Assembly: GCA_047495785.1 (NCBI GenBank)
Contig: JBLDXI010000013.1
Location: 3,720,001-3,784,000 of the forward strand
Direction: 5' to 3'
Length of the DNA stretch: 64,000 nt
Source of the DNA: Lepidodermella squamata
Lineage: Eukaryota; Animalia; Gastrotricha
The first letter of the stretch is position 1. Every line of letters begins with the position of its first letter. The notes under the pieces are model-generated. The model searched no databases, was not told the DNA's origin, and worked only from the letters and a program-made list of their open reading frames with translations. Shown here one piece after another: positions 42,101-63,973 of the stretch. Both the position numbers and the translations under genes were made by a program.

Positions 42101-44891
42101 ATAATTACAAGGCGAGGTAGCACGGTCCGAAAACTTCAAGAGCAGGGAAAATGTAGAGCAGTCGAGCGAATGAGAAGACGCCACCGACAGCAAACAGCAG
42201 TTCACTGATAGTCAACGGATCGCTCGAGTGGTAAAACATGCGATCTGAGGGCAGCCAGTACATATATTGCGGGAATAGCGCGTATCGCGACGGAGACGGG
42301 CGAAGTGACAGGAAAAACACGACCGTTTCCGTGACCTTGAAATACGCGTACAGCCGCGAGATCAGCGAGCAAATGTAGAAAAACAACTGGCCGAGATCGA
42401 TCATGTCAAATGGAGCTTTGAACATAGCCTTCAATAACGAAGTCCCAGGCACTGCTATTCCGACTGTACCACGAACGAATTGGCGCACCTTTCGGCAAAA
42501 TAAGCCGAAAAGCCAAACTGTGACAATCCAGCAGATCCAGTTGTCTGAGTTTGGCCTGACGTGGAAGTCCTTGTCGAGGCGGCAGATTTTCCAGACGCCG
42601 GCTGGGGACAGTTCGCCGAGTTGTGAGACAACGGGTTCATCTTCGTCCGGCTCTTCGATTGGGTAGACGAGGCCGCGCGTTTCATTGCAAAATGTCCGCA
42701 CGACCTCGTACAAATCATCGCCGTGATCGGCGTCGCTCGACGATGTTATGCCTTTTATGTGCGATATTATGTAATACATCGGCTGGTAGTTGTCGGCTAA
42801 AAATGAAAAAAATCAAATTTAAACGAAATAATTTGTAACAACTTGGCATTTCTGCTAATTAAAGAAAGGATGATTCATCGACTTTAGGAACATGATCATT
42901 ACCATTTTTTCAATTAAATGAAGGGGAATTTCATTAGGTATCATTTGGTTGATCATAAAAATCCTGAAAAATCAATCGATAGCGAGAAATAATTGGGTCA
43001 AAATAATCGCTCCACTGAAATTGAAGTTCTAGCGTTCTAGAACCACATTTTGTAAGATTTTTTCGGTCAGGTAATGGATCCACCCTATAAGTATCACTGA
43101 GATGTTGTACCTATTTATAAGCTTCCGGGTATGCATAACAACTTTCTTTGTTGGCTTCCCTGACTGAGGATAAAGAGAAAATCACTGATTTTGAAAATCG
43201 ATAATTGAAAATCGAAAATGAAATTTGAAAATCGATGATCGACATCTGATCTCATTGAGAAACTTGAAATTAAATTGTTCTCACCTGGATGTTGTATTTC
43301 CGACAGTTTTGGCGATGCGTCGTAGTACCCAGTTGGCGTTATGGTTATTACAAATAAAATCGTCAGGAAGAAAATGTAAGACATGGAATAAGCAACAAAT
43401 TTGACCATCGGTTTCGCCACAATTCGACCCATTTTGCTCTTCGGCGCCACCCAATGGAAAACCATTAAAATCGGGTAACACACAACTGTCAACAGCTAAA
43501 ACAAAAATTTATTGAAATTTAAACACAATTATTTTTTAATTTGATTACCAGACTGGTGAAAATTTTAGTGGGGCTCGACGATCCCTGATATTGAGAGAAT
43601 CCTCTCAGCCATTTTCGCATCAACTCTTGCTGACAGGCCCAATGTGATACGAACTCTTTCTGATGGTAATGAATCGCGACTCGAAGCCTAGACAAAGGCT
43701 GCGGCAGAATTTGGTCCGGCGTCACGATTTGCTTCGCCTGTTTCTTCCTCAGAACAGTATCGCCAGTACTCGAAGCCGCGAATCCACCCCCGATGCCGCC
43801 AGACCAGTCTAAAATAGTCTTTAACTCGTCGTGAGTTCGAATGCAGTCAAGCAGTTTGACAACATATCGCCGCATCAATTCTATCAAAGCTTTGTATTCA
43901 CTCTTGAAATGCTTCTCCCAAGTAGCGCGTAATTCCATCTCCTTGCATAGCTCGAACGAAGTTTGGAAAGGGTCGGGCGATGTTAGGGAGATATAGGCCT
44001 CGGACGTAAGGGCGCGGTACTCGTTCAAGCGACGTTTAGCGTGCTTCAACTGGTCTTCCATCCTCGCATCTTGGCAAGCCCCACAAGCGCAGTCGAAGTG
44101 ATGCGGAACTGGAACCCGCATTCCGTCTTGAAGCAGAAGATGAACGATTCCGAACAAGTTCTTCTGACACGCCAGGATTATAGGTGAGATGTCGTCGGAA
44201 AATGGGCTGGTATCTATAAAAACGAAGTCATAGTCAATAAAAAATCGAGTCGGGTAGTTAACCTGGCAATTTAGCGGCTAACTCTTGCCACCTATTGTGA
44301 TACTGCCGATAGGTAGGGTGTTTGAGAATTAATTCGGTGATATTTTCGTAACTAAAAAAATTCAATAAAAAATTTAGTTTAAATTGAAAAAAATTTCATA
44401 CTTGTGGTTTATTCCCAGTAAAAGGGCGAGATAAATATTAGCAGGTGAAGCGTGGTCCAACAGCATTTCGACGATCTAAAAAAATTCAATATTGGAAAGT
44501 TATTAGAAGCTCGGAAACTGTATACCTCAGCATGCTCATTCGCGACGGAAATTTGTAGGGCTGTTCGCCCGAACATGTCCGGAGCATTCGTGTCGAGGTT
44601 CGGATGGGTGATTAAAATTTCAGTGACGCTTGGTATGTCGCCGAATTCAGCGGCGTGTAACAGGTCCCGTAAAACTTCCCCGGGTATGGCGATCTGCGAG
44701 AACAACTTGAGCGTCGACTGGTGTTGACGCACTTTTTTCTCGAGTTTCCGCTCCTGACGCTGATGGCTCTATGAATGAGAAATTTAAGGAATAATTAGCG
44801 ACAGAAAAATTAGTTGAAAGCAATTATAATCAAAATGTTATCAATTCAAGTTGGGGAAAAATTAAGAAAATTATACCTTGGATCGATTCAT
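39131..44891 (-). CDS. TRPC: TRPC-family cation channel, paralog B (many exons; start tentative)
   Basis: Same motifs: PHHFDCACGAC, YRALTSEAYISL, FRTVFWALFGL, EWKFAR, EIKQDISSFRFEVL. Confidence 0.92.
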
Positions 44892-48900: not shown

Positions 48901-50053
48901 GCGGTTAAAATCGGCGTCAACTTTTCAATAGCTCGCGTATGGAATGCCAGTTCCAATACGATAGCTTCAGTCAACACTTTCTAATAATTATTCAACAAAA
49001 TTAAAAATTAATGAAATTTTTTAAATTTCAACCTTGAGTTGCTGCAATTTTGTCCGCTCAAAATTAATTAATTCAGACTCGCTTTTATTTTGAGCAGCCA
49101 ATGCGTCAAGGCTGCCAGATTGTTTATTCAAAGATGTTTCCGCTTGTTTCTGAAAAAAAAATATTAGAATACTTAATATAATCGATATTTTAGATTTGAA
49201 ATCCCTACCGTAGTTAATTTTGATTCGCTGCCAGAAAAACTTCGCCGCAGACTTTTCGCATCTTTACAGTCGTTTGAAAGCTTGAGGAAAAGTGGAATGA
49301 CGCTGCTCTCGATTTGGCCCAATTTAGCCTGGCGGTAGTCCTGAGTAGACACAAGGTACTTGGCCATAGATTCCATCGCGTTTTTCGTCGTAGGGCTGTA
49401 CATGTGCGGCCCACGAGCGAATTCAACGTTGATTTTCGCAACATCGTCAACTGAAATTTAGAATAAATATACAGTGTTGGAACGTTAAAACAATGCATGA
49501 AGCTACATTAGCTATTCAAAATGTGGTTCCTATGCGAAATGTGCTTACTTTAGTACCTATAGAGCTCTTATCAACTTGTTTTTTTACTTGTACATGAGTG
49601 CTGGTATTTAATTACTGATGTGTTCGGCTCAGTAGCTTAGTGGTAGAGCGTCTGCCTAGTAAGCAGAAGATCGAGGGTTCGATCCCCCCCTGAGCCTAAC
49701 CGAAATTATTTTTATTTTTTTATTCTTTTATTTTCGTATAGACCAACTCGGCTCTTTAATTATGTTCAAGTTTATATAATTTTTTTAATTCTTCGATTGT
49801 TAATTCCATCTCTTTCAGCGCATAATGCAAATGTTTGCATATTCACTTGATTTTTTTCATTATGAATATAAGGCTTACAGGCATCTCGAAGTCCAGCTTC
49901 TTTCCTGGCTATCGTTGAAAAAGCCCCAGTCATCGATTCCAAATATTTCTCAAAATTCGACAATGCATGCTGGGCATTGCTGAAAAATTCGAAAAAATAT
50001 TTAAAAAAACTACAAAATAAGGAATTAACTTACGCGGGAGGTTGAAGAGGCAT
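45912..50053 (-). CDS. FAM92: FAM92/CIBAR BAR-domain protein (about 6 exons; acidic and Pro/Gly-rich last exon 45912-46199)
   Basis: NFEKYL..IARKEAGLRD, QDYRQAKLGQIE, FERTKLQQLK, ELAFHTRAIE..INIEADLAEY match FAM92 hallmarks; the last intron 46200-48611 joins in phase 0. Confidence 0.8.
46628..48510 (+). pseudogene. Decayed gene or transposon remnant nested antisense in the FAM92 intron
   Basis: Higher-GC coding-like tract with broken ORFs (46639, 46883, 47430, 48190) in an unusually long 2.4 kb intron; family not recognised. Confidence 0.35.
49626..49697 (+). tRNA. tRNA-Thr (anticodon AGT)
   Basis: Acceptor stem GGCTCAG/CTGAGCC, D arm GCTTAGTGGTAGAGC, anticodon arm TCTGC-CTAGTAA-GCAGA, T loop TTCGATC, downstream T-runs. 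Confidence 0.93.
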
Positions 50054-50137: not shown

Positions 50138-51886
50138 TTAGCACATCGCAATATTAGCCAGCTGTTGAGTTGCAATAATTGAATTCAATTTAACATAAAT
50201 CTCCAACAAACAGTACGCATCAGCCGCCGCGTACAGCAGCTGGCCCTCGTCTAACGGCCGCCGGTTCCAGTTCGACATGCGGTACATTTTCGGCACCCGC
50301 TGCCCCAGCGCCCATTCAGCAACGTAGGCAAGCGATCGCGGCGGTTTATCACCGGCCAGCGGTGAATTTTTCTCGCGCAACGCCTGCCAAACACGAGTTG
50401 AAAACACCTCCAACTCGACGACATTTTTCGGCTCGAAGCACGCAAATTCAGCCGGGAAAGACTTGGCAAACATTTGAAGATCATACTTGAAGCCATGAGC
50501 AATTTTTTGAACACCCTCAGATTTCAGCACCCGACGAAACAACTCCCAGTCGCTCTTCGCAAATTTCAACTCGAGCGACTCTAGATCGATGATAAAAACT
50601 CGATCGATCAAGGCGATTTGAAGAATAGCCATTTTCGGCTCGCGATCCGGCGGCGTGACGCCCGTCCACTCCGCATCAATGCCAATCGACCGCATCAAAG
50701 GATCGCCTAAACTGCCAACAGACAGTATGTAGTGCATAGCGGTTTGAAATTCTCGCACAGAGTCGATAAAGGCGATGGTTTGCCTCGGCAACGGGAAGCG
50801 GTATAACGTTAAATTATCATTATCAGGCTGAACCTCACCCTGCATCATCACATTTTTCGCATCTCTTGGAATTGAAAATAAACGATGTAGAGACAACTGG
50901 TCGACAAAATGCGCCGCCTCAGCGTTCAACCCGCATTTGAGCAAACTTGAAATAGCATATGGAGCAAAACGCTGGTCAATATTAGCGAAGGTTGATATCA
51001 AATCTCGAAAAGTCCTAACATCCATTTCAGCCTCAGGACCGAAAGTCGATCGAATCAGGAAACTGACCTTCTTTTTCATGTCAAACAGTGACATATTCGG
51101 GTATTTCCGAATCGAAGCTAGGTCATTCAAGTCACGCGGCAGCTTTGAAACGGTCAGATCGAAAAAATCACCCGCAATACGAATATTCGTTCCAGTTGGG
51201 CCTAGTTCCGAGGCTAAACGGCCTGAATCAATCAACGAATCGAGATACGACAAAATTTTATGCCGTTTTTCGGCAGAAACTGCGAGGAGAATTTTCTTTA
51301 GCGTCGCGCTTTTGTTCATGCAAACGAGATAAATCGCCAATTTACCGAACATTTCGTCATTCAAAATCGACTCGACAGGTAGTATTTCGCAATGAATGTC
51401 GAGAATCGAAGACAACTCGCGAAAATTCCGGGCATCCGCGAATTTTTTAGCCGCTTCGGCGAAAATTTCGCGGACTTTGTCATTCTGGCGACTCGAGAAA
51501 CGGAATAAAGCATTGGCGAGGGAAAAATTTCGGGACGAATTGGCTAATGATAATGCGGCGGCTTGAGACTCAATTTCAGGCGCGATGAATTTCGCAAAAT
51601 TTTCATTCCACGAAGTTTGATTGCGAAAATCGTCGACAACTCGCTGTTGCTGCCATGCGAGAAAGCTGTCCCAAATGCAGTTGTACAGCGTATCCTTCGG
51701 ATTTTGGGCAGATTCTGCATTTTCGAGGAACGAATTGGCAAGATCGAGAAAGTCCTTGAACGGATTTTCACTGCGATTGAAAAATGCGATTATTGCATCG
51801 CTGCAGGCATTCCGAGAATCAACGGCTTGTTTTGCCCATAAATCGCGAAGAATAACCACCACACTTTCGACATTATTAGCTGCCAT
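50138..51886 (-). CDS. EXD3: EXD3/MUT-7/Nibbler-like DEDDy 3'-5' exonuclease, paralog 5 in transcription order (NTD + EXO)
   Basis: Intronless 582 aa; IGIDAEW, GFKYDL, SNWNRRPLDEGQLLYAAADAYCL. Confidence 0.88.
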   Translation of the reverse strand: MAANNVESVVVILRDLWAKQAVDSRNACSDAIIAFFNRSENPFKDFLDLANSFLENAESAQNPKDTLYNCIWDSFLAWQQQRVVDDFRNQTSWNENFAKFIAPEIESQAAALSLANSSRNFSLANALFRFSSRQNDKVREIFAEAAKKFADARNFRELSSILDIHCEILPVESILNDEMFGKLAIYLVCMNKSATLKKILLAVSAEKRHKILSYLDSLIDSGRLASELGPTGTNIRIAGDFFDLTVSKLPRDLNDLASIRKYPNMSLFDMKKKVSFLIRSTFGPEAEMDVRTFRDLISTFANIDQRFAPYAISSLLKCGLNAEAAHFVDQLSLHRLFSIPRDAKNVMMQGEVQPDNDNLTLYRFPLPRQTIAFIDSVREFQTAMHYILSVGSLGDPLMRSIGIDAEWTGVTPPDREPKMAILQIALIDRVFIIDLESLELKFAKSDWELFRRVLKSEGVQKIAHGFKYDLQMFAKSFPAEFACFEPKNVVELEVFSTRVWQALREKNSPLAGDKPPRSLAYVAEWALGQRVPKMYRMSNWNRRPLDEGQLLYAAADAYCLLEIYVKLNSIIATQQLANIAMC

Positions 51887-52054
51887 GATATTTAATAATT
51901 TTACCTATTCAGTTAAGAATAGCAGTAGTATAATATTTGATTTATTGTAGAATGAAAGAACAAGACGTGGGGAAGAATTTCTTCATCACTGGATAGCAAA
52001 AAACTTGAAATGAAAAAATTCATTTTGAAAGCATCAACAAATAATGCTGATAAT

Positions 52055-53731
52055 TCAGGGTAAGGAAAACCGCTCAGCTCTCGCAGCTTTTTTGCGCTCA
52101 TTTTCAGGCGTGGAAGTTCGCGATTTAGAAGCGGTCGGCGGTTCAAAATTCGGGAATTCGCCCAATCTCAACAGCATGTTCGCAGCAGCCCTTGACTTAG
52201 CGTCAGCTTTATTTTTCCCGATGCCTCTAGTCACCATCGAAATTTCACCCGAGATCGAACATTTCGCAGTGAAAAGCATCTCACATTGAGGGCGCGATGG
52301 ATCGTTGCGAATATCGAAATCTAGCGTGATTGATTTCTTTTTCGCCAAAACATGCAAAATGTCACTCGGATTTTTCGACCATATTTCAGCGGCAAATTTC
52401 GTAGAATCAATCGAAGCATTCAAGCAATTGGCGATATATTTCGCCTGATCTTTCATCGAAGCGATAGGCACACCAATGAATTCGACTTTTTCGGGTTTTT
52501 GACTTGACGATTGGGCGGAGAAATGGTGTTGAATAGTCACGACAGTTCTTTTATGGCTCCGAGCTTTTTCGCCCAAAACCGAAATTCCAACGTCATTTTC
52601 TTCGAAATCGACATTGAAACCCAAATGCCGCAAATAACCGCCGAGATCGAGGAGGTAAGGGTCGAATAACAGACTGAATTCGGCAGGATTTTTCAAATTT
52701 TTCTCGATATTCAACGTGGAAGAACACGATGACTGATCGTCAATAAACGACTCGGAATTAGGTATCAACAAATTTCGAGAACGAATAACATCGCAAATCA
52801 CGTCGTAAATTTCCAGCAAGCAATAAGCGTCATTTGCTGCGTATATCAGCTGGCCACGAGATAGCGGACGCCGGCACCAATTCGACATTCGATACATTTT
52901 CGAGAGAGGCTTTCCGAGAAAAGTTCTCGCAACTTCAGCCAGATTTTTCGGCGGGCCGACGTTGGTAGAAGCATCTAGAGTGACCCCATTTTTCAAGGTA
53001 ATAGGACCACAGCCTCGAACTCGAAGGGCGTCCCAAACGCGAGGAACAAGAACCTCAATATCAACAACGCTTTCCAGCGCTAATTTACTGCAATACTGGG
53101 GGAAAGTTCGACCTAAAGTCACTACGTCAGAATTGAAACCGAACGCGATTTTTCTCACGTCTTTCGATGCGAAAAATTGTTGAAGGAACGCCCAGTCACC
53201 CTTGGCCAATTTACGCGACAAATTTTCGATATCAACAATAAAAACTGAATTTTCAATGCCGAGTTGAATTATCGACGTCGCGCTGACTGAGTTTGGCAGA
53301 AAATTCGGCAGCCATTCCGAGTCGATTCCGACACATTTATTCTTCGGCAACGCCAGGATATTTTCGAAAATTTCTCGAAATTTCGGCGGAGAATCGATGA
53401 ATTGTATCGAGGATTCAGGTATCGGTAAAGTGTAGAATAACGGCGACGGTTGACTAGGAAAATGCGGCGCTTTTTTACCTGGGCCTGGGGTGTGAGCCAG
53501 GGTGCGTAGAAAATGGTGCAGCTTGTACTTGTTCGCCATGAAACGCGCTTCTTCGTAATAATGCTTCTTGATAAGAGTTGAAACTAAGAAATGAGGATAA
53601 CGTGAGTCAATATCTTCAAAACGATCGACCATATCACGAAACGTCGCAATGTCCATTTCAGCTTTTTCCCCGAAAACCAATTTCAACATGTAAAAAGTTG
53701 AGCCTTGAAGCTGCGAATAAGTCGCCGTCAT
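52055..53731 (-). CDS. EXD3: EXD3/MUT-7-like exonuclease, paralog 4 (short NTD + EXO + partial Mut7-C + dsRBD)
   Basis: 558 aa; VGIDSEW, GFNSDV, SNWCRRPL..YAANDAY; LLFDPYLLDLGGYLRHLGFNV; GIGKNKADAKSRAAANMLLRL. Confidence 0.88.
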   Translation of the reverse strand: MTATYSQLQGSTFYMLKLVFGEKAEMDIATFRDMVDRFEDIDSRYPHFLVSTLIKKHYYEEARFMANKYKLHHFLRTLAHTPGPGKKAPHFPSQPSPLFYTLPIPESSIQFIDSPPKFREIFENILALPKNKCVGIDSEWLPNFLPNSVSATSIIQLGIENSVFIVDIENLSRKLAKGDWAFLQQFFASKDVRKIAFGFNSDVVTLGRTFPQYCSKLALESVVDIEVLVPRVWDALRVRGCGPITLKNGVTLDASTNVGPPKNLAEVARTFLGKPLSKMYRMSNWCRRPLSRGQLIYAANDAYCLLEIYDVICDVIRSRNLLIPNSESFIDDQSSCSSTLNIEKNLKNPAEFSLLFDPYLLDLGGYLRHLGFNVDFEENDVGISVLGEKARSHKRTVVTIQHHFSAQSSSQKPEKVEFIGVPIASMKDQAKYIANCLNASIDSTKFAAEIWSKNPSDILHVLAKKKSITLDFDIRNDPSRPQCEMLFTAKCSISGEISMVTRGIGKNKADAKSRAAANMLLRLGEFPNFEPPTASKSRTSTPENERKKAARAERFSLP

Positions 53732-53831
53732 TATTGTAAAAAAAAATTCAAACTAATTTCAACAAAAAATGCAATGGGTAATTAATTTAATCAATGGCAC
53801 AGAAAAAAAAAACAAGTTAAAATATAATTTT

Positions 53832-55796
53832 TTAAGGCGATTCAGCCTCTGTCAAGCTAACATTTGAAAGATCGAGCTCAGACGAAGAGGAAGAAACATC
53901 GGCAATATTATTATTGCAAAATAGAGCCAATTCCAAGTTTTGAGACGCGATAACATAATTTATCTGAGCGTAAATTTCAAGAAGACTTGTAACATCACAG
54001 GCCGCATACAAAAGCTGGCCTTGGTCGAGCGGGCGGCGATTCCAGTTCGACATTCGGTACATTTTCGAAATTCGCCGGCCGAGAAATTTTTGCGAGACAT
54101 CAACAAGGCTTTTCGGCGCTGTTTCACTCAACGAAACGTCAAGAATCGAATTCGAACCAGGCAGTGAAATTGGGCCGCAATTTTTCTCGCGAAGATTTAG
54201 CCAAAGTTGATCGACTACGCCACCGATATCGACAGTATTCGAAAATTTCAGATCGCGAAATGCATCAGGGTAGCTACGTTGCAACATGCTGATGTCAGAA
54301 TTGAAGCCAAAGGCAACTTTCGTGACATCGGAAGACGAGAAGAAATCACGCATTAATTGCCAGTCACATTTGCTCAACAATTTTTTCAGGGAAATTAAAT
54401 CGAGAATGAAGACGCGATCTGAAGTTCCGAGCTGTAAAATCGAGGGAATTTGTTGTTGCCCGGGAGCAACAACTCCGGTCCATTCAGCATCTAACCCAAC
54501 TAAACCGTTACTTTCCAGCAATAGGCTCATTATTTCACGATATTTTTCAGCAGTGTCCACCATCAAAATAGAGGTCAAAGGCAGCGGAAATTCATAAATA
54601 GGCAACGAAAAATTCGTTTTTGACGGACTTTTCAACTTTTTCTCAGGCGATGACGCCTGTTGTTGTTGTTTCACGGGTGAAAAGGACGAGAAAACGGGAG
54701 AATAAACCAGTTCAGTGAAACCGAAACACTCGGCCCAATAACGAGCTTCGTCTAAATGGCCGAATTTCATCAGTGTCTTGACAATTTTCTGCGAAAAACG
54801 GTTATCAATTCGCGAAAATTCGTCGATTACCTCGCGAAACGTGGCTAAATCCATTTCTGCCTCGCTGCCGAACGTCGATTTAATAATATATGCTGATTTC
54901 TTTTCAAGTTCCATATAAATTATATTACGACAAAATCGACGAGGCGGGCGGATGTTTCGCCACAGTTCAACAGCATTCGACTCAAAAGTCGTTAGAGACA
55001 CATGGAAATTTCGCCCCTCCTCCAATTCAGCCCGAATAGCAGGGAAACGGTCATTCAACGGCGTTCCGATGAAAGAATCAACATAAGCGACTACTTCGAA
55101 AATTCGACTCGAGGGGCGGACGTGTTTTAACATTTTCGAAGCTACGCCAGCTCGATTTTTACAAGCCATGAACAAAACTTGTTTTCGCAACAAATCATCG
55201 TTAAAATCTGCTACAGCCTGCCATAATTTAGGCCCAAGACTTTCTAACATAGCCAACAAAGCGTGGTAATTTTTGCTATTCGCATGGCTCCGCAACTCTT
55301 TGACAAAAAATTCCAAGACTTCTTGGCGGTCATGATCAGGGAATCGAAAGAGCAAACACGCGGTGCCGAAGCTACGATTGTTATGCTTAACAGCTAAATA
55401 AGCGGCTCGCTTCAGAATTTCGACATTAATTAGGCCGCTGAATTGTTCCCACCACTCGTTATCGAATTTAATGTTGTCTTTTCGGTGAATTTTACCACGG
55501 GGTAGACGCGTTTGCTGCCAAGCTATGAAGCGGTGCCAAAAACGAAGATGCAAACTGTCGGAATTTGCGATATTTTCCGGTTCGGCAGGTAAACTTTCCA
55601 TTAGCTCCAAGAATGAAATGAAAGGATTTTCAGCCGCGGCGAAAAAGCTCCAAATCGCCATGGTCACCATATCTCGATTTTTGTTGTCGGTTTTGCGGTC
55701 AAGCCATGTCTTTTGAGCCCATTCGCTGAAAATCGCCACATTTTTCACGTCGATCCCAGGGTCCAACACTGTAACTTGAGGCGTATTTTCTTCCAT
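53832..55796 (-). CDS. EXD3: EXD3/MUT-7-like exonuclease, paralog 3 (NTD + EXO)
   Basis: 654 aa; VGLDAEW, GFNSDI, SNWNRRPL..YAACDV. Confidence 0.88.
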   Translation of the reverse strand: MEENTPQVTVLDPGIDVKNVAIFSEWAQKTWLDRKTDNKNRDMVTMAIWSFFAAAENPFISFLELMESLPAEPENIANSDSLHLRFWHRFIAWQQTRLPRGKIHRKDNIKFDNEWWEQFSGLINVEILKRAAYLAVKHNNRSFGTACLLFRFPDHDRQEVLEFFVKELRSHANSKNYHALLAMLESLGPKLWQAVADFNDDLLRKQVLFMACKNRAGVASKMLKHVRPSSRIFEVVAYVDSFIGTPLNDRFPAIRAELEEGRNFHVSLTTFESNAVELWRNIRPPRRFCRNIIYMELEKKSAYIIKSTFGSEAEMDLATFREVIDEFSRIDNRFSQKIVKTLMKFGHLDEARYWAECFGFTELVYSPVFSSFSPVKQQQQASSPEKKLKSPSKTNFSLPIYEFPLPLTSILMVDTAEKYREIMSLLLESNGLVGLDAEWTGVVAPGQQQIPSILQLGTSDRVFILDLISLKKLLSKCDWQLMRDFFSSSDVTKVAFGFNSDISMLQRSYPDAFRDLKFSNTVDIGGVVDQLWLNLREKNCGPISLPGSNSILDVSLSETAPKSLVDVSQKFLGRRISKMYRMSNWNRRPLDQGQLLYAACDVTSLLEIYAQINYVIASQNLELALFCNNNIADVSSSSSELDLSNVSLTEAESP

Positions 55797-55864
55797 TTTT
55801 AATGTCTATAAAAATGAATAAAGCGATGAAATTTATTAAAATATAATTCAGCAAAATAAAATGT

Positions 55865-57679
55865 TCATAATTCGCACTCGGAAGATGAAGAAACATCTGT
55901 CTGAGCAGGCTCCAACAAATCCAACTTGATATTCAACGATTCAATAACAAATTTAATTTCATCGAAAATGTCCAACAAACAAACAGCGTCTATTGCCCCG
56001 TATATAATCTGAGCTCGATCTAACGGCCGTCGATTCCAGTTAGATTTGCGCACCCGTTTAGAAATGCGCCGGCCCAAAAAACGCTGGGCAAGTTCGGTCA
56101 AACTACCGGGAGCATTGCAAGCGGCAACATCGAGAATAACACCGGAATTTTTCAGCTTTACTTGGCCAGAATTAGCGAGGCGTAAATTTGTCCACAGTCG
56201 AGGCGCCACAATTTTCAAATCAACGGTATTCAACAGTTCAAAATTTCGAAAGTGATCGGGAAAAGAGGTTTTCAGCATAGTTGCATCGGATTTGAAGTCG
56301 AAGGTGACTTTTTGCACTTTTTCGGAAGAGAACATGTCTAGCAGAAGTTGCCAGTCATTTGGCTCCAGTTTATCGCTCAGAGTTACGAAATCGACTAAAT
56401 AAGCTCGATCTCGAAGACCGAGCTGCAAAATCGAAACAAGCTGCTTCTGGCCGGGTAGAGGTATACACGGCCACTCTGAATCAATCCCAACTACAGAGGC
56501 TGAATTGAGAATATAGAGTAGAGCTTCACGAAATTCAGTCACGTTCGATAGCAGATGAATTGAATTTTCAGGCAAAGGATACTCGTAAACTGGCAGTGTA
56601 TAATCAGCCTTTGAAGGGCTTAAAATACGCTTGGTCTTTTCGTTACAATGTGAATCGCCAACGACCGAATTCAAGCCGAAAATGTTCGCCCAATAATGAG
56701 CTTCTTCGCACATGTTTTCATCACTCAACGATTTGATAAGAAATTCACGGCACCGAGGTTCAATCTCGCAATAGGCGGCAATCAGCTCTCGAAACGTCGC
56801 CAAATCCATCTCGCTGTGCTCTTCAAAGGCCATTCCAATGAGGTAAGTTATTTTCTTGCGGATTTCAGCGAACGCGACATTGGGGCATATTTTCTGAGGT
56901 ATATTCATCAAACGGCACAGTTCGGCCGCGCTCGACTCGAATGAATCCAAGGTGAATTGGTTAGTGGAAAGCTCAGTTTGAATTAAAGCACTTCTCTCGT
57001 GATTATGCATTCCGACAAAAGAGTCCAAATAAGAAAATATAGCAGAAGTTCCCTCTGTTTCTTGGTTAATCATCAACAATTTTTTCGCAATTTTGACCTT
57101 GCCTTTGCAAATCAGCAACAAAACTAGGCAATTTAATGATTTCTTGTCAAGTTCGAGATGCATTTCGGTCAATTTCTCGCTCATCTTCTCCAGGATATTG
57201 GAAACCGCTACGTAATTGTCATGCTTTAGTAGCTCGGATACCTTTCCCGAAATATCACGGAGGCCTTTCTCATCAACATAAGTGGATAACCGGAAAGCAG
57301 CACTTATTACAGAGAAATTAGCCGCGTTGTTCCTCAAAGCAAGATTCAAAGCTCTGTCGACGATCTCGGGTGAGACATAGCGACTGAATCGAATAGACCA
57401 CAAATCAACGCCGTGATGAGTAATTTTATCTCGCTGGATGGTAAATTGCTGCCAGATAATAAACCGAGTCCATATTAAATTTTCTAATTCTTGAACGCAG
57501 CCATGTAGAAAGTGGACAATGTCAATTATCGAGGAAAATGGATTCAGGCTCTTGGAAAATAAATCTTGCAGGAGATTAGCGATCTTTTCTTTGAAGTCGG
57601 GATCTTGCTGCAGCCAAGCTTTCTCGATTAATCCGGCCAACGCTCTCGCATCATCATTAGACTTTTCATTAGAGCTCAT
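55865..57679 (-). CDS. EXD3: EXD3/MUT-7-like exonuclease, paralog 2 (NTD + EXO)
   Basis: 604 aa; VGIDSEW, DFKSDA, SNWNRRPL..YGAIDAV. Confidence 0.88.
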   Translation of the reverse strand: MSSNEKSNDDARALAGLIEKAWLQQDPDFKEKIANLLQDLFSKSLNPFSSIIDIVHFLHGCVQELENLIWTRFIIWQQFTIQRDKITHHGVDLWSIRFSRYVSPEIVDRALNLALRNNAANFSVISAAFRLSTYVDEKGLRDISGKVSELLKHDNYVAVSNILEKMSEKLTEMHLELDKKSLNCLVLLLICKGKVKIAKKLLMINQETEGTSAIFSYLDSFVGMHNHERSALIQTELSTNQFTLDSFESSAAELCRLMNIPQKICPNVAFAEIRKKITYLIGMAFEEHSEMDLATFRELIAAYCEIEPRCREFLIKSLSDENMCEEAHYWANIFGLNSVVGDSHCNEKTKRILSPSKADYTLPVYEYPLPENSIHLLSNVTEFREALLYILNSASVVGIDSEWPCIPLPGQKQLVSILQLGLRDRAYLVDFVTLSDKLEPNDWQLLLDMFSSEKVQKVTFDFKSDATMLKTSFPDHFRNFELLNTVDLKIVAPRLWTNLRLANSGQVKLKNSGVILDVAACNAPGSLTELAQRFLGRRISKRVRKSNWNRRPLDRAQIIYGAIDAVCLLDIFDEIKFVIESLNIKLDLLEPAQTDVSSSSECEL

Positions 57680-57732
57680 TAATTTTTGTTAAAATGATCT
57701 AGCGAAAAAAATAAAAAATAAAAATTAAGAAA

Positions 57733-60117
57733 TTAATACTCATCCTCGAGCTCTTTCTCAGTCAATAACAAAATCATGTTAGTTGCAGCACGATTTTTCG
57801 CATCATGCTTAGAAGCCCCGACGCCTTTAGTTTCTAATAACAATTCACCAGATGAAGTCGAATGCAAGCGGCAAATAGTCTCGAACGGAGGTTCGTCATC
57901 AGAGCGACCAGGCTTGATAACATCTTCGTATGTAGCGTGGCCACGATCAGGCAGGTGAGCAGAAACTTGATGCAGACGCTGAATTGGATTTTTAATAACA
58001 AAATTTTCATCAATCTTTGTAGCATCAACACGAGTGCCGAGCCTGAGAGCGAGGAATTCAATCTGATCTCGGAGTGAACCAGTTGGAACTGAAATCAACT
58101 TGTCCGATTGTTCCTCGTTGATACAGGATGTTATGATTATGCAGTCGTTTAAATTTGCTTTTTCTTCCAAATCAGTGATATCGCATTGTTTTGGTATGAT
58201 TGAAACATCAAATCCAATCCGTCTCAAGCAAAGACCAAGGTCAACCAAGACAGCATCACAAAGAAGGTGGAACTTGGAATAATCAGCTGAAACGTCATCT
58301 TTCACATTATTCGTATTTTCCACATTCAAATTGCAAGCAGAGATGAGAAAAGACATTGAGCGATATATTTCTAACAAGCAATACGCGTCGATCGCAGCGT
58401 AGAGTACTTGGCCTTCATTCAATGGCCGTCGCCTCCAGTTTGATAATCTGTACATTTTGTTTATTCGTTTTCCAATGAAAATTCGTGCGACATCGGATAA
58501 ACTTGACGGGACTTCCGCAGTCTTAACGTTGAACGATAAGTTGTTTTCCAGCTGAATAATCGGATGATTAGCCGCTCTTAATAGTTTCCATAATCTGACA
58601 GTTAGGCTCTCGAAGTCAACCAGGTTAACAATTTGAACGCCATCCATTTGCGGAAACGATTCAAGCAAAGCGGAGACATCGGACTCAAATCCAAACGTCA
58701 ACTTCTTTATTTTAGGAGAAGAAAACAACTCTTTCAGCAAGCTCCAGTCGCTTTCATTAAATTCAGCCGATAATTGATCCATATCGAGAAGAAAAACGCG
58801 ATCAGAGACTGCAAGTTGGAGAATAGATATTTTTGATTTGCTGCCAAGTTGGCACATTGCGGGCCATTCGGAATCAATGCCAATCAGTAAGTCATGCTCG
58901 GTCAGTTTGTCAGCTTCAGATAGAAGGCAATCAAGAGTACGCTGGAAATCTGCTCTCGAGCTCACAACTTTTACACATTGGCGAGGGATCGGCAGCGCGT
59001 AAAATTGAGAACTGGCAATGCTTTCATTCATCTTATTTCTATCGCTGAGGTAGTTTTTGCTGTTATCATGAGTTAAAAGGCAAGTTTCGATATTAGGAGG
59101 CAATTTCTCCATATCCTTCGCAAATTGCAAGAAGTAACGAGCTTCATTGGGAAGACCGTGAGAAGATAGGTAAGAAATAACCCATGATAGAAAACTAAGA
59201 TGATCATTCGCTAAAAGTAAAATGAACTCGTGAAAAGAATCAACGTCCATTTCGGCTTCAACGCCAAATGCTGCGCGTACCATGAACAGAGTCATTTCCT
59301 TTAGGTAAATCAAAACGACGTTGGGGCAGCAGTCAGGTAAAATATTCAAATCGGCTATAATACCGGATAAGATAGTGAACATTGAAGAGTGGGAATAGAC
59401 AAGCTTAGCTGGAGACGCGAGAATGTCAGAAGTGAATGGATCAGAGTCTTCCGAAATTTCAGGAATCACAAGAGCATCTAGCGATGACATGAGGTTAATA
59501 ATTTTCATTGGAGAATTCATAGATTTTAAAATAGCTTTCAGCAAATGTCCCTCCTTTTTGCTTATCAAGAATAGCGACAGATTCTTTAGCTGATCATCGC
59601 TAAGAATGTCACACAGCTGGAATTTATCAGCACCCAAGTGATCAATCATAGCAGCAGCAGCTCGGAAATTGTTCTCGCTGATCAATTGAGACAGTTTTGC
59701 AGAAAATATAAGTGAGATTGGACGATCACGGCAGTGTTCCTTGAACTTGAAAGTGTTAGACGCAGTAGAAAAATACCGCATTTTGTTCTTGAAAGATAAT
59801 TCAACAGCACGCAGCAATTGTTCGCCAGATAGAAGGTCACTCATAACGTTGTTTTGGTTCGTCGAAGCAGATACAGATTCCAGCTTCTTCGTGAATTGAT
59901 GCCAAGCATAATCTGTGACCTTTTCCCAGTATCTTATAGGTTCCGTGGCAAGGTGGTCAATAAGGTTCAAAAACGCCTCGGCTGGATTAGCAGCTTCTTC
60001 AAAGTAACGATCAAGAAAATGTAGAACGGCTTCCTTGCTATTAATTTCGTTTGTCCGCTCTCTCAAAATCAAATCAAGGTTCAACACCAATGCCGTGACA
60101 TCGGAAACACAGGACAT
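57733..60117 (-). CDS. EXD3: EXD3/MUT-7-like exonuclease, paralog 1 (NTD + EXO + partial Mut7-C + dsRBD)
   Basis: 794 aa; IGIDSEW, GFESDV, SNWRRRPL..YAAIDAY; LLCDAVLVDLGLCLRRIGFDV; NPIQRLHQ..PPFETIC..GVGASKHDAKNRAATNMILLL. Confidence 0.9.
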   Translation of the reverse strand: MSCVSDVTALVLNLDLILRERTNEINSKEAVLHFLDRYFEEAANPAEAFLNLIDHLATEPIRYWEKVTDYAWHQFTKKLESVSASTNQNNVMSDLLSGEQLLRAVELSFKNKMRYFSTASNTFKFKEHCRDRPISLIFSAKLSQLISENNFRAAAAMIDHLGADKFQLCDILSDDQLKNLSLFLISKKEGHLLKAILKSMNSPMKIINLMSSLDALVIPEISEDSDPFTSDILASPAKLVYSHSSMFTILSGIIADLNILPDCCPNVVLIYLKEMTLFMVRAAFGVEAEMDVDSFHEFILLLANDHLSFLSWVISYLSSHGLPNEARYFLQFAKDMEKLPPNIETCLLTHDNSKNYLSDRNKMNESIASSQFYALPIPRQCVKVVSSRADFQRTLDCLLSEADKLTEHDLLIGIDSEWPAMCQLGSKSKISILQLAVSDRVFLLDMDQLSAEFNESDWSLLKELFSSPKIKKLTFGFESDVSALLESFPQMDGVQIVNLVDFESLTVRLWKLLRAANHPIIQLENNLSFNVKTAEVPSSLSDVARIFIGKRINKMYRLSNWRRRPLNEGQVLYAAIDAYCLLEIYRSMSFLISACNLNVENTNNVKDDVSADYSKFHLLCDAVLVDLGLCLRRIGFDVSIIPKQCDITDLEEKANLNDCIIITSCINEEQSDKLISVPTGSLRDQIEFLALRLGTRVDATKIDENFVIKNPIQRLHQVSAHLPDRGHATYEDVIKPGRSDDEPPFETICRLHSTSSGELLLETKGVGASKHDAKNRAATNMILLLTEKELEDEY

Positions 60118-60751
60118 TTCAGATTAAAAACGAGGTTGAATCTATGAAGAACGATAAAACTTCACAAACTTGGGACTTGATGAACTGGCTTATGAATATA
60201 GCATGGCAGATGCTTTGAATTATCATCTCACTTGAATCACTTGCGTGCATACGCATTAGCTATGTCTACCATCCACCCGACTCGAGTGCAGTTGGCGTAA
60301 AACCATGAGAAAAGGCTACCGCAGACCGGCAAACAAGCACGCGTTGCTACATATAAAAAATTTCGGCACCTTGCTAGCGAATTCAACTTATTGATTCGGT
60401 TAGCAAGATGACAGATTGGTATATTTTATGAATTGCAAAGTTTTTCACGCTAAATAAAAGCAGCATTGCGCGCGCGTCCATCACGTCGCGTCAATGATCG
60501 GCCTCTCTGCATTCCTCGCGAGTTCGCGAGCCGCTGAGTTGGTCCTAGGATCTGGATGCTTAGGCGCGCCTTTGTTCCGCAGAACGAAAGTGAACTCTAA
60601 AAGATATTTAGCCATTTCCATTTTAGTCATATGGAGGCACCTCCGTTTTATTAATGAGATTCCTTCAAGGAGGCACAGGGCACAGTATCCTTGATGACCA
60701 GCTGAGAGTTGTCGTTTTAGTGGCGCGGCGGAATTCAGTCTCAAACGTATT

Positions 60752-60780
60752 TATAATAATAATAATAATAATAATAATAA
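60752..60780. repeat. (TAA)n microsatellite
   Basis: About 9 ATA/TAA units. Confidence 0.85.
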
Positions 60781-61508
60781 TTTTATTTCCAAAACAAAGT
60801 TTTGAGGACGGAAAGGGTACGCAGACCGCTTACATCGGCCCTTTTATTCAGTATTTGGCAGAAGACTTAAGATTCAGTGTAACCAGTGTCTTATAAAAAA
60901 TTTGAATCTCATTCGCGTTCCTCGTAGTGGGAAGTAGGAGTCGGCGCTTTTCTCTTTTCTAGCTCTCTTCCAGCTGGTGATGCCTCCTCTATCTTTCTTC
61001 TGCGCCCACTATTGACGTGTTTATAGTAACGAGTTGTTTTTGTTGACCTGCCATGAAATCTTGGACGCCAATCTCAAAAATTGTAGGTCCGTGGTACTCC
61101 CATTTCTCAGTTCTTTGAGGAAGTTTGCAGCAGGCATCCCTTGAAAGCCAGACAAAATCATATGGGATAAGTAGGAGTGCAATTTATGTACGTTACTGTT
61201 ACTAATCGAGTGGCAATTTTGTCATCACGATGAGCTTGTGCTCAAAAACCAATCATGCGGGAGGAGTTGATTAGTTGAAGTAAAATATCGCGGATTCCAT
61301 GAAAACAATAGTGGGAAATACTTATTCGAGGTCTGTGTTTTTCCTTTTTCAGTAGCTGTGTGACATCGTATCCCATCGTTCACATCTACAATTTTTGGTT
61401 TCTGTTGCCCTAACATCATGGTATAGATTTTTTCCGCAGCTTTTGGAGATATACATATGAGTTCAATAAGCCCTGATTTATTTTATTTTATCACGTTAGA
61501 GTCTTTTA

Positions 61509-63973
61509 ATGAAATCGGAAACAAAAATGAAGACTGTTTCGAGTAGGCGAAATTCTCGCAAACAAGTCGTGTCTGAAGTCGACGAGCAACAGGAAAATAT
61601 AAAATCATTTGACGAAAACCTTTCTGATGTTTCGTTGGAATCATGCAAGAGCGAAGATGACGACTGGGTCGACCGCGAAGAAAAGCAGGTTAGCTCTGCG
61701 GATAGCGGAGCTGTCTTATCCAAGAAATCTCCAGTAAAGCGATACGTGAAACAATCTCCTCGGAAAGATGAATATGAATACGATTCTTCGGATGAAGAGG
61801 TAGGTATTATTAGTCCCAATGACCCAAACACAATTTATTAATGCTCATTTGCTATCCAGGACATCCGAAATACCGTAGGAAACATTCCTCTTCAATGGTA
61901 TAAAACTTACGACCACATCGGTTACGACTGGTCCGGAAAGCGTATCCTCAAACCGAAATCGGCCGATGGAAGTTCGCTTAGCCGCGATCTTATCGATATT
62001 TTCATTTCCCGCATGGACGACCCGAACTTTTCACGAACTGTCATTGATCCCCAGACAGGTCAGGAAGTTACGCTATCCGATAAGGATCTCGAGCTCGTGC
62101 GAAATATTCAGCGAGGGAACTATCCAGATCTTAGTCACGACCCCTATGAGCCCTGGGTTGATTTGTATTCGCACGAAGTTGAGCAATTTCCAGCTGTCGA
62201 TGTTCCACCTAGCAAGCGTAGTTTCTTGCCATCTTTGGCGGACCGTGTCAAAATTGGCCGAATGGTTCATTCTATTAAAATGGGTTGGATGAAACCCCGA
62301 GGCGCCAAGCCGTTGTTTGCAACTGATCAGCAAGAGAAGTACTATTTGATGTGGCGTGACGGCGAGGAACCGGAAACCAACAAACACTACAAAACTCGCA
62401 TTCCAGCTCCGAAATTGCCGTTACCGCCCACGACTGAGTCTTACAACCCACCTGCTGAACACTTGTGGACACCTGAGGAGAAGGCGAAGTGGGAGAAAAC
62501 CGACCCAGAAGATCGTCGTCAAAATTACGTGCCTCAAAAATATAACTCGCTACGTCAAGTGCCGGCCTTCTCTCAGTTTATCCAAGAGCGCTTCCAACGC
62601 TGTCTTGATCTGTATTTGTGCCCACGTGCTACGAAAAATAAGACTCCAATTGATAATCCTGAGGATTTGTTGCCGAAATTGCCTCGACCCCGTGACCTGG
62701 AACCTTTCCCGAAAACAGTCAGTGTTACCTACACAGGTCACACGTCACTTGTTCGATCTGTCTCGCTCGATTACAGCGGTCAGTGGTTGGTATCTGGATC
62801 AGATGATGGCACAGTTCGTTTCTGGGAAGTTTCAACTGGACGTTGTATGCGAACTGTCACGTTAGCAAGCGGCAGTCCTGTTAAACAAGTGGCATACAAC
62901 CCGAATCCTCAACTTACCTTAGTTGCTGCTGTCGTGTAAGTTTTTAATCATAATCATTCATCTGATCGAAATTTTGGACTTTGCCTTTCCTGGTTAAGCG
63001 CAGGAAATGCCATCAAAAATGAGATAACTCCCACTGTTTTTTGTTGTTGTGCTTAAATCTTATCTCATCGGATGCTTTGCTGATTACTAATTATTCTAAG
63101 TGCGTGTCTGTTTATTCGTATAGCGGTAACGAGTTGGTGCTAATCAACGCGGGATTAGGAGATAAGGTGCTAGTCGAGGCGACCGCCTCGCTGTTTTCTG
63201 ATATCTCTCCATCGAAACCAGTTGTAGTCGAGGGAAACAACGCAAATGTAAAATGGAGCGTCCCTAAATCGTCGGCGAGTAGCGGCGGGGCTATTCTCAT
63301 GCGAATCGAGCACCAAAAAGAGATCGGACGTGTCGATTGGCATGCTAAGGGCGACTATTTCGTCGTAGCTATGCCCCAAGGCCTAAGTCAGTCGGTCTAC
63401 GTTCATCAAATGTCGAAACGGCGAACGCAGAACCCGTTCAAAAAGGCGAAGGGCATTGTTGGAAGTGCTTTATTCCACCCGACTAGGCCGCAACTGTTTG
63501 TGGTCACCCAGCAATCGATCCGGATCTATGATTTGTTGAAACAGCAGCTGTTGCGTAAATTAACTGCGAATTGCAAATGGATTTCTTCGGCCGAAATTCA
63601 CCCGAGTTCTGGCGATCACGTTTTAATTGGCAGCTACGATTGCCGGTTGAACTGGTTCGATTTGAACTTATCACCCAGGCCGTATCGAATGATTCGACCT
63701 CACCAATCTGCTGTTCGGCGTGTAACTTTCCACAAAAGGTACCCACTTTTTGCGTCGTGCTCTGACGACGGGTCGATTTTGGTCAGTCATGCGACTGTGG
63801 ATGATGATTTGCTCACAAATGCGACGATTGTTCCTTTACGAGTGCTGCGAAATGGTCACGATGTTGCGTCGGATAAGCATAATGGCTTAGGTGTGCTGGA
63901 TTGCGTCTTCCACCCCACACAACCGTGGTTGATTTCGAGCGGAGCTGACGGCAAAATTTGCCTGTGGACTTGA
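61509..63973 (+). CDS. BOP1: Ribosome biogenesis protein BOP1/Erb1 (exons about 61509-61799, 61860-62935, 63124-63973)
   Basis: DSSDEE|DIRNTVGNIP, ESYNPPAE, ERFQRCLDLYLCPR, PKLPRPRDLEPFP, WD40 repeats, FHPTQPWLISSGADG. Confidence 0.97.

What the first reader, a model, noticed from the sequence alone, without database searches (positions are those of the whole stretch)
50138..60117. Array of five intronless, catalytically intact MUT-7/EXD3/Nibbler exonuclease paralogs
Seen: five head-to-tail single-exon ORFs, each with ExoI (D-x-E-W), ExoII (F-x-x-D) and ExoIII (SNW-x-RRPL..Y-x-A-x-D) motifs and a shared FG-x-EAEMD-x-x-TFR-like motif, but strongly diverged elsewhere. Neighbouring genes all have introns. 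Established: this family is normally single-copy and acts on small RNAs (Drosophila Nibbler trims miRNA/piRNA 3' ends; C. elegans MUT-7 acts in Mutator-focus 22G biogenesis and transposon silencing). Inference: an old, selectively retained expansion with division of labour in small-RNA or antiviral defence, possibly seeded by a retrocopy.
Basis: partly seen in the sequence, partly recalled or inferred. Interest (0 to 1): 0.88.

Follow-up and report, generated by a model that had tools for sequence, protein, structure and literature searches.

The report
Ancient five-gene MUT-7/Nibbler exonuclease array
Five back-to-back intron-free genes for small-RNA-trimming exonucleases of the MUT-7/Nibbler/EXD3 family are real, catalytically intact, come in three different domain layouts, and are kept gene-for-gene in a distantly related animal, so this is an old, selected expansion of a normally low-copy RNA-silencing enzyme.

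Summary
There are five minus-strand single ORFs (582, 558, 654, 604 and 794 aa) with 53-168 bp spacers. All carry an intact DEDDy 3'-5' exonuclease domain and are 30-36% identical to each other.

The family call is supported. The best solved structures are Nibbler EXO domains. A confident ORF1 model matches human EXD3, fly and mosquito Nibbler, and worm MUT-7 and ZK1098.3 over its full length, far ahead of WRN, EXD2 and EXD1.

New here:
- An unnamed relative from metagenomes keeps the same array next to BOP1, with 1:1 orthologues for four genes.
- Neutral sites between the two species are saturated. BOP1 is about 80% identical, while the array orthologues are only 23-56% identical per domain.
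- All ORFs and catalytic residues survive, and pN/pS within the relative is about 0.22. The array is therefore old, selected and fast-evolving.
- Three layouts are conserved: NTD-EXO-CTD-dsRBD (ORF5), NTD-EXO (ORF1, 3, 4) and EXO-CTD-dsRBD without the NTD (ORF2). A dsRBD stands where the MUT7-C zinc finger normally is.

Not shown: a retrocopy origin, expression, operon transcription and a small-RNA role. Other first-stage notes on this genome had already flagged the dsRBD fusion, the operon-like packing and a sixth copy 1.77 Mb away.

The parts
57733..60117 (-). ORF5, 794 aa, the full layout: helical NTD, DEDDy EXO (about 58324-59004), half MUT7-C (CTD-N, about 58018-58284) and dsRBD (about 57748-57975). 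Orthologue of the relative's 750-aa gene.
   Evidence: (exo1 1.1e-19; dsrm 2.9e-4; Mut7-C 0.015)
55865..57679 (-). ORF4, 604 aa, NTD-EXO (Nibbler-like layout). The most divergent copy (FEEHSEMD, KRVRKSNW). Sister to ORF3 plus its orthologue, with no orthologue found in the relative.
   Evidence: AU p=0.033 against an ORF3+ORF4 clade
53832..55796 (-). ORF3, 654 aa, NTD-EXO. Orthologue of the relative's 633-aa gene.
52055..53731 (-). ORF2, 558 aa, with no NTD. It has a short helical FG-x-EAEMD module, EXO (about 52772-53419), CTD-N (about 52412-52684), dsRBD (about 52163-52369) and a basic tail. Orthologue of the relative's 512-aa gene, which is truncated in the same way.
   Evidence: dsrm 3.5e-7; AF2 pLDDT 85
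50138..51886 (-). ORF1, 582 aa, NTD-EXO. Orthologue of the relative's 627-aa gene.
   Evidence: (AF2 pLDDT 93.4)
51887..52054 (-). ORF2-ORF1 spacer, 168 bp, with AATAAA and a pyrimidine-rich ...AG shortly before the ATG.
53732..53831 (-). ORF3-ORF2 spacer, 100 bp, T-rich with an AG acceptor-like site.
55797..55864 (-). ORF4-ORF3 spacer, 68 bp, with AATAAA then ttttatag 11 nt before the ATG.
60118..62012 (.). Region between ORF5 and the divergently transcribed BOP1 gene. It is the only long non-coding stretch next to the array and the likeliest site of a shared promoter.
49878..50053 (-). Start of the next same-strand, intron-containing gene: ATG 85 nt after the ORF1 stop, first intron 49980-50033. 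Another note calls it FAM92-like; Pfam did not confirm that here.

Best explanation
The stretch holds five functional paralogous genes for DEDDy 3'-5' exoribonucleases of the MUT-7/Nibbler/EXD3 family. A lineage-specific ancestor had already swapped the MUT7-C zinc finger for a dsRNA-binding domain. It was duplicated in tandem before this species and a distant relative split. The copies then settled into three layouts: NTD-EXO-CTD-dsRBD (ORF5), NTD-EXO like Nibbler (ORF1, 3, 4), and EXO-CTD-dsRBD without the NTD (ORF2).

Shown:
- the genes, domains and catalytic residues;
- family membership;
- orthology and conserved synteny;
- purifying selection, combined with much faster protein change than in the neighbours.

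Inferred from the known family biology (Nibbler trims Argonaute/PIWI-bound small-RNA 3' ends, MUT-7 is needed for siRNA amplification, and the NTD and CTD act as RNA-binding arms; PMC11347159):
- each copy trims RNA 3' ends;
- the NTD forms work on single-stranded 3' ends of Argonaute/PIWI-loaded RNAs;
- the dsRBD forms are brought to duplex or hairpin substrates;
- the fast-changing NTDs track different or changing partners.

The 53-168 bp spacers suggest that the five genes, and perhaps the next gene, are transcribed together from the BOP1-side promoter and resolved by trans-splicing. This is not shown.
For: ORFs and motifs.

Family:
- PDB sequence hits are Nibbler 1e-19, WRN 4e-13 and EXD2 5e-3.
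- Foldseek on the ORF2 model gives Nibbler EXO first, at 8e-15 and TM 0.82.
- The ORF1 model (pLDDT 93.4) matches EXD3, Nbr, MUT-7 and ZK1098.3 over residues 6-575 at 4.5e-20 to 2.7e-14. The next hits match the EXO domain only: WRN-exo-like 1.6e-8, EXD2 2e-6, EXD1 4e-6.
- Named hits of the profile search are all 'exonuclease mut-7 homolog' and align from the NTD through the EXO domain.

Age and selection:
- Relative locus L001 has BOP1 followed by genes of 750, 633, 512 and 627 aa, with 62-189 bp gaps.
- The tree puts the ten proteins in one clade (100/100) with four 1:1 pairs, each supported at 99/93 or better.
- Four-fold sites differ at 0.66-0.76, which is saturated.
- BOP1 is 75-84% identical, against 23-56% per domain for the array.
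- Polymorphism is 14 synonymous and 11 nonsynonymous differences, binomial p=1.9e-4.

Layouts.

Spacers.
Against: No expression, small-RNA or biochemical data were obtained. The only hint of transcription is a run guessed to be RNA that holds 62% of the sampled words. Fast divergence could reflect relaxed constraint outside the catalytic core rather than an arms race. Between-species dN/dS cannot be measured because dS is saturated. The polymorphism counts are small and come from one relative. DEDDy enzymes can also act on DNA, so RNA specificity rests on family analogy. Short spacers alone do not prove an operon.
Confidence: 0.72

Rival explanations
1. The duplicates are decaying or functionally redundant and drift neutrally. 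The motifs survive only because the copies are young or by chance.
For: Paralogues and orthologues are very divergent, at 23-56% identity. One copy (ORF4) has no orthologue in the relative.
Against: Neutral sites between the two species are saturated, yet nine ORFs of 512-794 codons are open and all DEDDy residues are invariant. pN/pS is about 0.22. The chance of one such open frame is about 3e-16.
Confidence: 0.03
2. They are WRN-exo/EXD2-type DNA exonucleases for repair or replication, not small-RNA enzymes.
For: The EXO domain also matches WRN exonuclease well, at 4e-13 and Foldseek 1.5e-10. Substrate was not tested.
Against: Nibbler, EXD3 and MUT-7 score best by sequence and by fold. Only they match the N-terminal helical domain over the full length. 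Two copies carry a dsRNA-binding domain.
Confidence: 0.05
3. The array was founded by a retrocopy of an intron-containing parent, the dispersed paralogue, and then amplified by tandem DNA duplication.
For: There are no introns in 9.6 kb of array CDS here or in 7.6 kb in the relative. Neighbours have introns. A dispersed paralogue in the relative has two introns and the full layout. A first-stage note reports a similar copy 1.77 Mb away in this genome.
Against: The dispersed copy's introns are 11 and 4-19 residues away from the nearest introns of the Priapulus, Mya and Blattella genes. It lacks the nine or more shared ancestral introns just as the array does. The tree leaves it in a basal polytomy, not as sister to the array. 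No poly(A) or target-site traces can be expected at this age. Exons of 0.9-2.1 kb are common nearby, so the lineage is intron-poor in general.
Confidence: 0.3
4. The genes are separately transcribed from tiny intergenic promoters in a compact genome, and there is no operon.
For: No read evidence was obtained. The spacers are A/T-rich and could hold minimal promoters. In the relative, the gap to the next gene downstream of the array is about 400 bp.
Against: Gaps of 53-168 bp must hold a 3' UTR, a poly(A) signal, a promoter and a 5' UTR. AATAAA followed by pyrimidine-AG just before each ATG fits trans-splice resolution. The tight spacing is conserved in the relative at 62-189 bp. These are first-stage notes only, but other notes on this genome suspect SL trans-spliced operons.
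Confidence: 0.4

Closest known systems
Drosophila/Aedes Nibbler (Nbr; PDB 7JW6, 7JW2; UniProt Q9VIF1, Q179T2)
   Same: ORF1, ORF3 and ORF4 have the two-domain layout of a HEAT-like NTD plus a DEDDy EXO domain. It is the best solved-structure match, and the full-length fold matches.
   Different: Identity is only 16-29%. There are five tandem copies instead of one. Two copies carry CTD-N plus a dsRBD, and one lacks the NTD.
Human EXD3 and C. elegans MUT-7 (Q8N9H8, P34607; PMC11347159)
   Same: The NTD-EXO-CTD order is that of ORF5 and of the dispersed paralogue. The CTD-N motif (V-D-x-M-L-x-G-L-G-x-x-L-R-x-x-G-x-D) is recognisable. EXD3 is the top structural hit.
   Different: The CxxC...CxxC zinc finger and its insertion are absent, and a dsRBD follows CTD-N instead. 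The Pfam Mut7-C match is below threshold. No MUT-8-binding insertion is present.
C. elegans ZK1098.3 (P34603), the MUT-7 paralogue with a partial CTD
   Same: It is a precedent for a retained MUT-7 paralogue with a trimmed C-terminus, and it is a full-length fold match (PMC11347159).
   Different: It is a single extra copy. It is not part of a conserved multi-gene array and has no dsRBD.
WRN exonuclease, EXD2 and EXD1
   Same: They share the DEDDy fold and the ExoI-III motifs.
   Different: Scores are weaker and the match covers the EXO domain only. They have no MUT-7-type NTD.
Lineage-specific duplications of RNAi and piRNA genes (for example the Drosophila obscura group, PMC6505081)
   Same: Duplication and fast protein evolution of silencing-pathway genes.
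   Different: The papers found describe no MUT-7/EXD3 array and no dsRBD fusion.

Membership tests
MUT-7/Nibbler/EXD3 3'-5' exoribonucleases | DEDDy exonuclease domain (PF01612) with all catalytic residues | tested here: met
   Pfam E 1e-17 to 1e-20 in all five. D, E, D, Y and D are invariant in the five window proteins and the five proteins of the relative.
MUT-7/Nibbler/EXD3 3'-5' exoribonucleases | EXO domain closer to Nibbler/MUT-7/EXD3 than to WRN, EXD2, EXD1 or RRP6 | tested here: met
   PDB phmmer gives 73 bits for Nibbler, 51 for WRN and 18 for EXD2. Foldseek PDB gives Nibbler 8e-15 first. In Swiss-Prot models the top five are all MUT-7 family, followed by a gap of 1e6 in E-value.
MUT-7/Nibbler/EXD3 3'-5' exoribonucleases | N-terminal HEAT-like helical domain colinear with that of MUT-7, Nbr and EXD3 | tested here: met
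   Met for ORF1, 3, 4 and 5. Profile alignments to named mut-7 homologues run from profile position about 5 to 595. The ORF1 model is all-helical over residues 1-330 and aligns with EXD3, Nbr and MUT-7 from residue 6. ORF2 and its orthologue lack this domain.
MUT-7/Nibbler/EXD3 3'-5' exoribonucleases | MUT7-C domain (CTD-N plus zinc finger). It is typical of the family but absent in drosophilid Nibbler. | tested here: not met
   Only the first half is present in ORF2 and ORF5 (Pfam Mut7-C E 0.077 and 0.015, profile positions 3-82 of 146). The CxxC...CxxC columns are empty and a dsRBD follows. ORF1, 3 and 4 have no CTD.
MUT-7/Nibbler/EXD3 3'-5' exoribonucleases | Single-stranded-RNA 3'-5' exonuclease activity on small RNAs and a role in silencing | not testable with these tools
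WRN-exo / EXD2 DNA exonucleases | Best match to WRN/EXD2, with no MUT-7-type NTD | tested here: not met
   these are weaker matches that cover the EXO domain only.
dsRBD (PF00035) proteins | alpha-beta-beta-beta-alpha fold with a match to the dsrm profile | tested here: met
   ORF2 scores E 3.5e-7 (31 bits, cut-off 23). ORF5 scores 21.8 bits, just under the cut-off. The relative's dispersed copy scores 23.6 bits. The AF2 ORF2 model has H455-465, E468-475, E485-493, E496-505 and H508-522. Atlas feature hits are dsrm clusters, with weak scores.
Spliced-leader-resolved operon | Same-strand genes with spacers of roughly 50-200 bp | tested here: met
   Spacers are 168, 100, 68 and 53 bp, plus 85 bp to the next gene. 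In the relative they are 62, 189 and 141 bp.
Spliced-leader-resolved operon | Polycistronic precursor RNA, and a spliced leader on downstream cistrons | not testable with these tools
Rfam found no SL RNA gene in the window.
Retrogene-founded family | Intron-bearing parent that keeps ancestral intron positions, with intronless derived copies | tested here: not met
   The dispersed copy has two introns, but at new positions. All ancestral positions shared by Priapulus and Mya are empty in it as well. The tree does not polarise it.

The most novel reading that the evidence does not exclude
The array is a co-transcribed toolkit of exonucleases that splits RNA 3'-end processing among substrates. 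The Nibbler-like copies would each serve a different Argonaute/PIWI partner. The dsRBD-bearing copies, one of them without the NTD, would form a new kind of MUT-7 enzyme that is guided to double-stranded RNA. Candidate substrates are Dicer products, hairpins and viral replication intermediates. On this reading the fast change of the NTDs reflects an ongoing conflict with transposons or viruses.
Probability: 0.2. Interest if true: 0.8.

Novelty: new variant of a known kind. Interest (0 to 1): 0.62.

Why it matters
MUT-7/Nibbler/EXD3 is conserved from sponges to mammals, yet a function is known only in worms and flies, and vertebrate EXD3 is still unexplained (PMC11347159). This lineage has run a natural domain-dissection experiment on the enzyme: NTD only, CTD only, or both, with a dsRBD in place of the zinc finger. 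It has also kept each version for a very long time. That gives directly testable hypotheses about what the NTD and CTD arms contribute and whether a MUT-7 enzyme can be aimed at dsRNA. It also adds a strong case of duplication plus fast evolution in an RNA-silencing gene outside arthropods and nematodes.

Tried and rejected
- **Word-index homologue searches.** Searches with ORF5 and with the five-protein alignment gave nothing. The exhaustive profile search was needed.
- **Read laying.** There is therefore no expression, splice or spliced-leader evidence. ORF5 was used as 57742-60117, the ORF5-ORF4 spacer was not read or searched, and ORF5 was not looked up by exact sequence. Local scripts still held the full ORF5 translation.
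- **Exact look-ups.** ORF1 and ORF3 are not on record in public assemblies.
- **Taxon placement.** A paper search for the metagenome sample codes found nothing relevant.
- **Closer relatives.** A metagenome scan found only two remote EXO-only loci (GC 54% and 72%). A viral-contig scan found none.
- **Between-species dN/dS.** Abandoned because four-fold sites are saturated.
- **Parent-gene test.** The test by shared intron positions was negative.
- **FAM92 name.** Pfam did not confirm it for the downstream gene.
- **Other checks.** No further MUT-7-like fragments lie elsewhere in the window. Some animal loci were withheld or not on record.

Full report
**Observation.** One search shows five uninterrupted ORFs on the minus strand at the stated coordinates:
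- ORF1, 50138-51886, 582 aa
- ORF2, 52055-53731, 558 aa
- ORF3, 53832-55796, 654 aa
- ORF4, 55865-57679, 604 aa
- ORF5, 57733-60117, 794 aa

They are separated by 168, 100, 68 and 53 bp. At 42-44% G+C, one open frame of 582 codons has a chance of about 3e-16. Pfam finds the 3'-5' exonuclease domain DNA_pol_A_exo1 in every copy, with E 1e-17 to 1e-20. The five proteins are 30-36% identical. They share invariant ExoI (D-x-E-W), ExoII (D) and ExoIII (Y-x3-D) residues and the S-N-W-x-R-R-P-L block.

ORF2 begins at the FG-x-EAEMD helical module and has no N-terminal domain. ORF2 and ORF5 continue past the exonuclease into a half MUT7-C domain and a dsRNA-binding domain. The dsrm E-values are 3.5e-7 and 2.9e-4, and Mut7-C is below threshold. 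No further copies or fragments lie elsewhere in the window.

**Family.**
- By sequence, the best solved structures are the Aedes and Drosophila Nibbler EXO domains (1e-19). WRN follows at 4e-13 and EXD2 at 5e-3.
- An AlphaFold model of ORF2 (pLDDT 85.3) shows a short helical module, the EXO fold, a beta-alpha-beta CTD-N and an alpha-beta3-alpha dsRBD. Foldseek ranks Nibbler EXO first, at 8e-15 and TM 0.82.
- A model of ORF1 (pLDDT 93.4, pTM 0.88) has an all-helical domain over residues 1-330 followed by EXO.
- Against Swiss-Prot models, the five best matches to the ORF1 model cover nearly its whole length. They are human EXD3, fly Nibbler, Aedes Nibbler, worm MUT-7 and worm ZK1098.3, at E 4.5e-20 to 2.7e-14.
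- WRN-exo-like proteins (1.6e-8), EXD2 (2e-6) and EXD1 (4e-6) match the EXO part only.
- In an exhaustive profile search of 1.84 billion representatives, every hit that carries a name is an 'exonuclease mut-7 homolog', and the alignments run from the NTD through the EXO domain.

**A conserved orthologous array.** The five best hits of that search (300-555 bits, against 257 or less for all other animals) come from one unnamed organism assembled from several ENA metagenomes. Its contigs carry, next to a divergently oriented BOP1 gene, four head-to-tail single-ORF genes of 750, 633, 512 and 627 aa with gaps of 62, 189 and 141 bp. This is the same neighbourhood as in the window: BOP1 on one side, the same intron-bearing gene and TRP channel genes on the other.

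A maximum-likelihood tree of 55 proteins puts the ten proteins of the two species in one clade (100/100). Within it there are four 1:1 pairs, each supported at 99/93 or better: ORF5 with the 750-aa gene, ORF3 with 633, ORF2 with 512, and ORF1 with 627. These pairs follow the gene order.

ORF4 is sister to ORF3 plus its orthologue (100/90). An AU test disfavours a species-specific ORF3+ORF4 clade only weakly, at p=0.033, and the group was named after the tree had been seen. So at least four, and probably all five, duplications predate the split, and the relative probably lost the ORF4 type. The three layouts are kept orthologue by orthologue, including the missing NTD of the ORF2 type.

**Selection and rate.**
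- Four-fold degenerate sites differ at 0.66-0.76 between the species, for the array and for BOP1 alike. Neutral sites are therefore randomised, and between-species dN/dS cannot be measured.
- Against that background, nine ORFs of 512-794 codons remain open and all five DEDDy residues are invariant. This requires purifying selection.
- Within the relative, two assemblies differ by 14 synonymous and 11 nonsynonymous changes over the four genes. That gives pN/pS of about 0.22 and a binomial p of 1.9e-4 against neutrality. The counts are small.
- The proteins nonetheless change far faster than their neighbours. BOP1 is 75-84% identical and the TRP channel 75-97%, whereas array orthologues are 23-30% identical in the NTD, 36-44% in EXO and 29-35% in CTD-N and dsRBD.
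- Whether this speed reflects positive selection or loose constraint outside the catalytic core is open.

**C-terminal domains.** In an alignment with 35 other animal homologues, ORF2, ORF5 and their orthologues keep the first MUT7-C motif (…D-x-x-L-x-x-L-G-x-x-L-R-x-x-G-F-x-V…). They lack the two CxxC pairs of the zinc finger, and the dsRBD occupies that end. Busetto et al. describe MUT7-C as a TOPRIM-like CTD-N plus a zinc finger with variable insertions. They show that it adds RNA affinity and speeds degradation in MUT-7 and EXD3 (PMC11347159). Replacement by a dsRBD is not mentioned there or in the other papers I found. This confirms another first-stage note (s1-379615).

**Origin.** In the relative, a sixth, dispersed paralogue lies on another contig. 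It is 911 aa with the order NTD-EXO-CTD-N-dsRBD, followed by an RG-rich tail, and it has two introns of 54 and 48 bp. A first-stage note reports a similar gene 1.77 Mb from this window, which I could not read.

The tree leaves it in a basal polytomy. Its introns are 11 and 4-19 residues away from the nearest introns of the Priapulus, Mya and Blattella genes. It lacks the nine or more positions shared by Priapulus and Mya just as the array genes do. Intron loss therefore goes back to the ancestor of the whole clade, in a genome where exons of 0.9-2.1 kb are common. A retrocopy founder stays possible but is not specifically supported.

**Transcription.** The spacers contain AATAAA-type signals followed by pyrimidine-rich stretches ending in AG 10-30 nt before the next ATG. 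The next, intron-bearing gene starts only 85 nt after ORF1. The only long non-coding stretch is the 1.9 kb shared with BOP1. This fits a polycistronic unit resolved by trans-splicing, as another note proposed (s1-379862).

I have no read evidence. The only hint is a run guessed to be RNA that holds 62% of the sampled words. Those places cover most of the ORF5-ORF4 spacer and the last two codons of ORF5.

**Mechanism.**
- Shown: five intact genes of the MUT-7 family in three conserved layouts, under selection.
- Inferred from the family's known biology: each enzyme shortens RNA 3' ends. The NTD-bearing, Nibbler-like copies act on single-stranded ends of Argonaute/PIWI-loaded RNAs. The dsRBD copies are recruited to duplex or hairpin RNAs. 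ORF2, with no NTD, may depend wholly on its CTD-N and dsRBD arm.
- The fast-changing NTDs suggest diverging partners.

**Rivals.** The rival explanations are neutral decay, WRN/EXD2-type DNA enzymes, viral origin (no viral relatives), retrocopy founding and separate promoters. They are weighed in the Rival explanations section.

**Verdict.** The observation and the family assignment hold, and the inference that the expansion is old and retained is now backed by comparative evidence. The array is a new variant of a known kind: a conserved multi-gene MUT-7 array with domain shuffling and a dsRBD fusion. It is not a new kind of system. Interest is moderate to high for small-RNA biology. The functional claims remain to be tested.

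Noticed in passing
window 49626-49697 (+): A tRNA-Thr (AGT) gene sits on the opposite strand inside an intron of the gene that starts 85 nt downstream of ORF1.
   Followed up: partly
L005 10163-12997 (relative's dispersed paralogue): The 911-aa MUT-7 paralogue has two short introns at non-ancestral positions. After its dsRBD it has an RG-rich tail (GRGRARQ…HRRGAQ). This could be a methyl-arginine or Tudor-binding site, as in PIWI-pathway proteins.
   Followed up: partly
window 53832-53900, 55865-55910 and equivalent positions after the EXO domains: An acidic, serine-rich patch (D-V-S-S-S-S-E…) directly follows the EXO domain in ORF3 and ORF4, and more weakly in ORF2 and ORF5. It may be a phosphorylation or short-linear-motif site.
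   Followed up: no
window about 34377-44753 (-); L001 14341-21884: There are several TRP-channel (TRP_2 / Ion_trans) genes in tandem, conserved at 75-97% with the relative. The best named homologues are only 30-33% identical, in gastropods, so the organism has no close annotated relative.
   Followed up: partly
P0006 (Strigamia, 1334 aa), P0011 (Notodromas, 1317 aa): These predicted proteins contain two MUT-7-type stretches each. This suggests fused annotations of tandem duplicates, so smaller MUT-7 duplications may exist in other invertebrates.
   Followed up: no
window 60760-60800 (minus-strand reading): A short (ATT)n microsatellite and G+C-rich patches lie in the 1.9-kb region between ORF5 and BOP1, the likely shared promoter region.
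   Followed up: no
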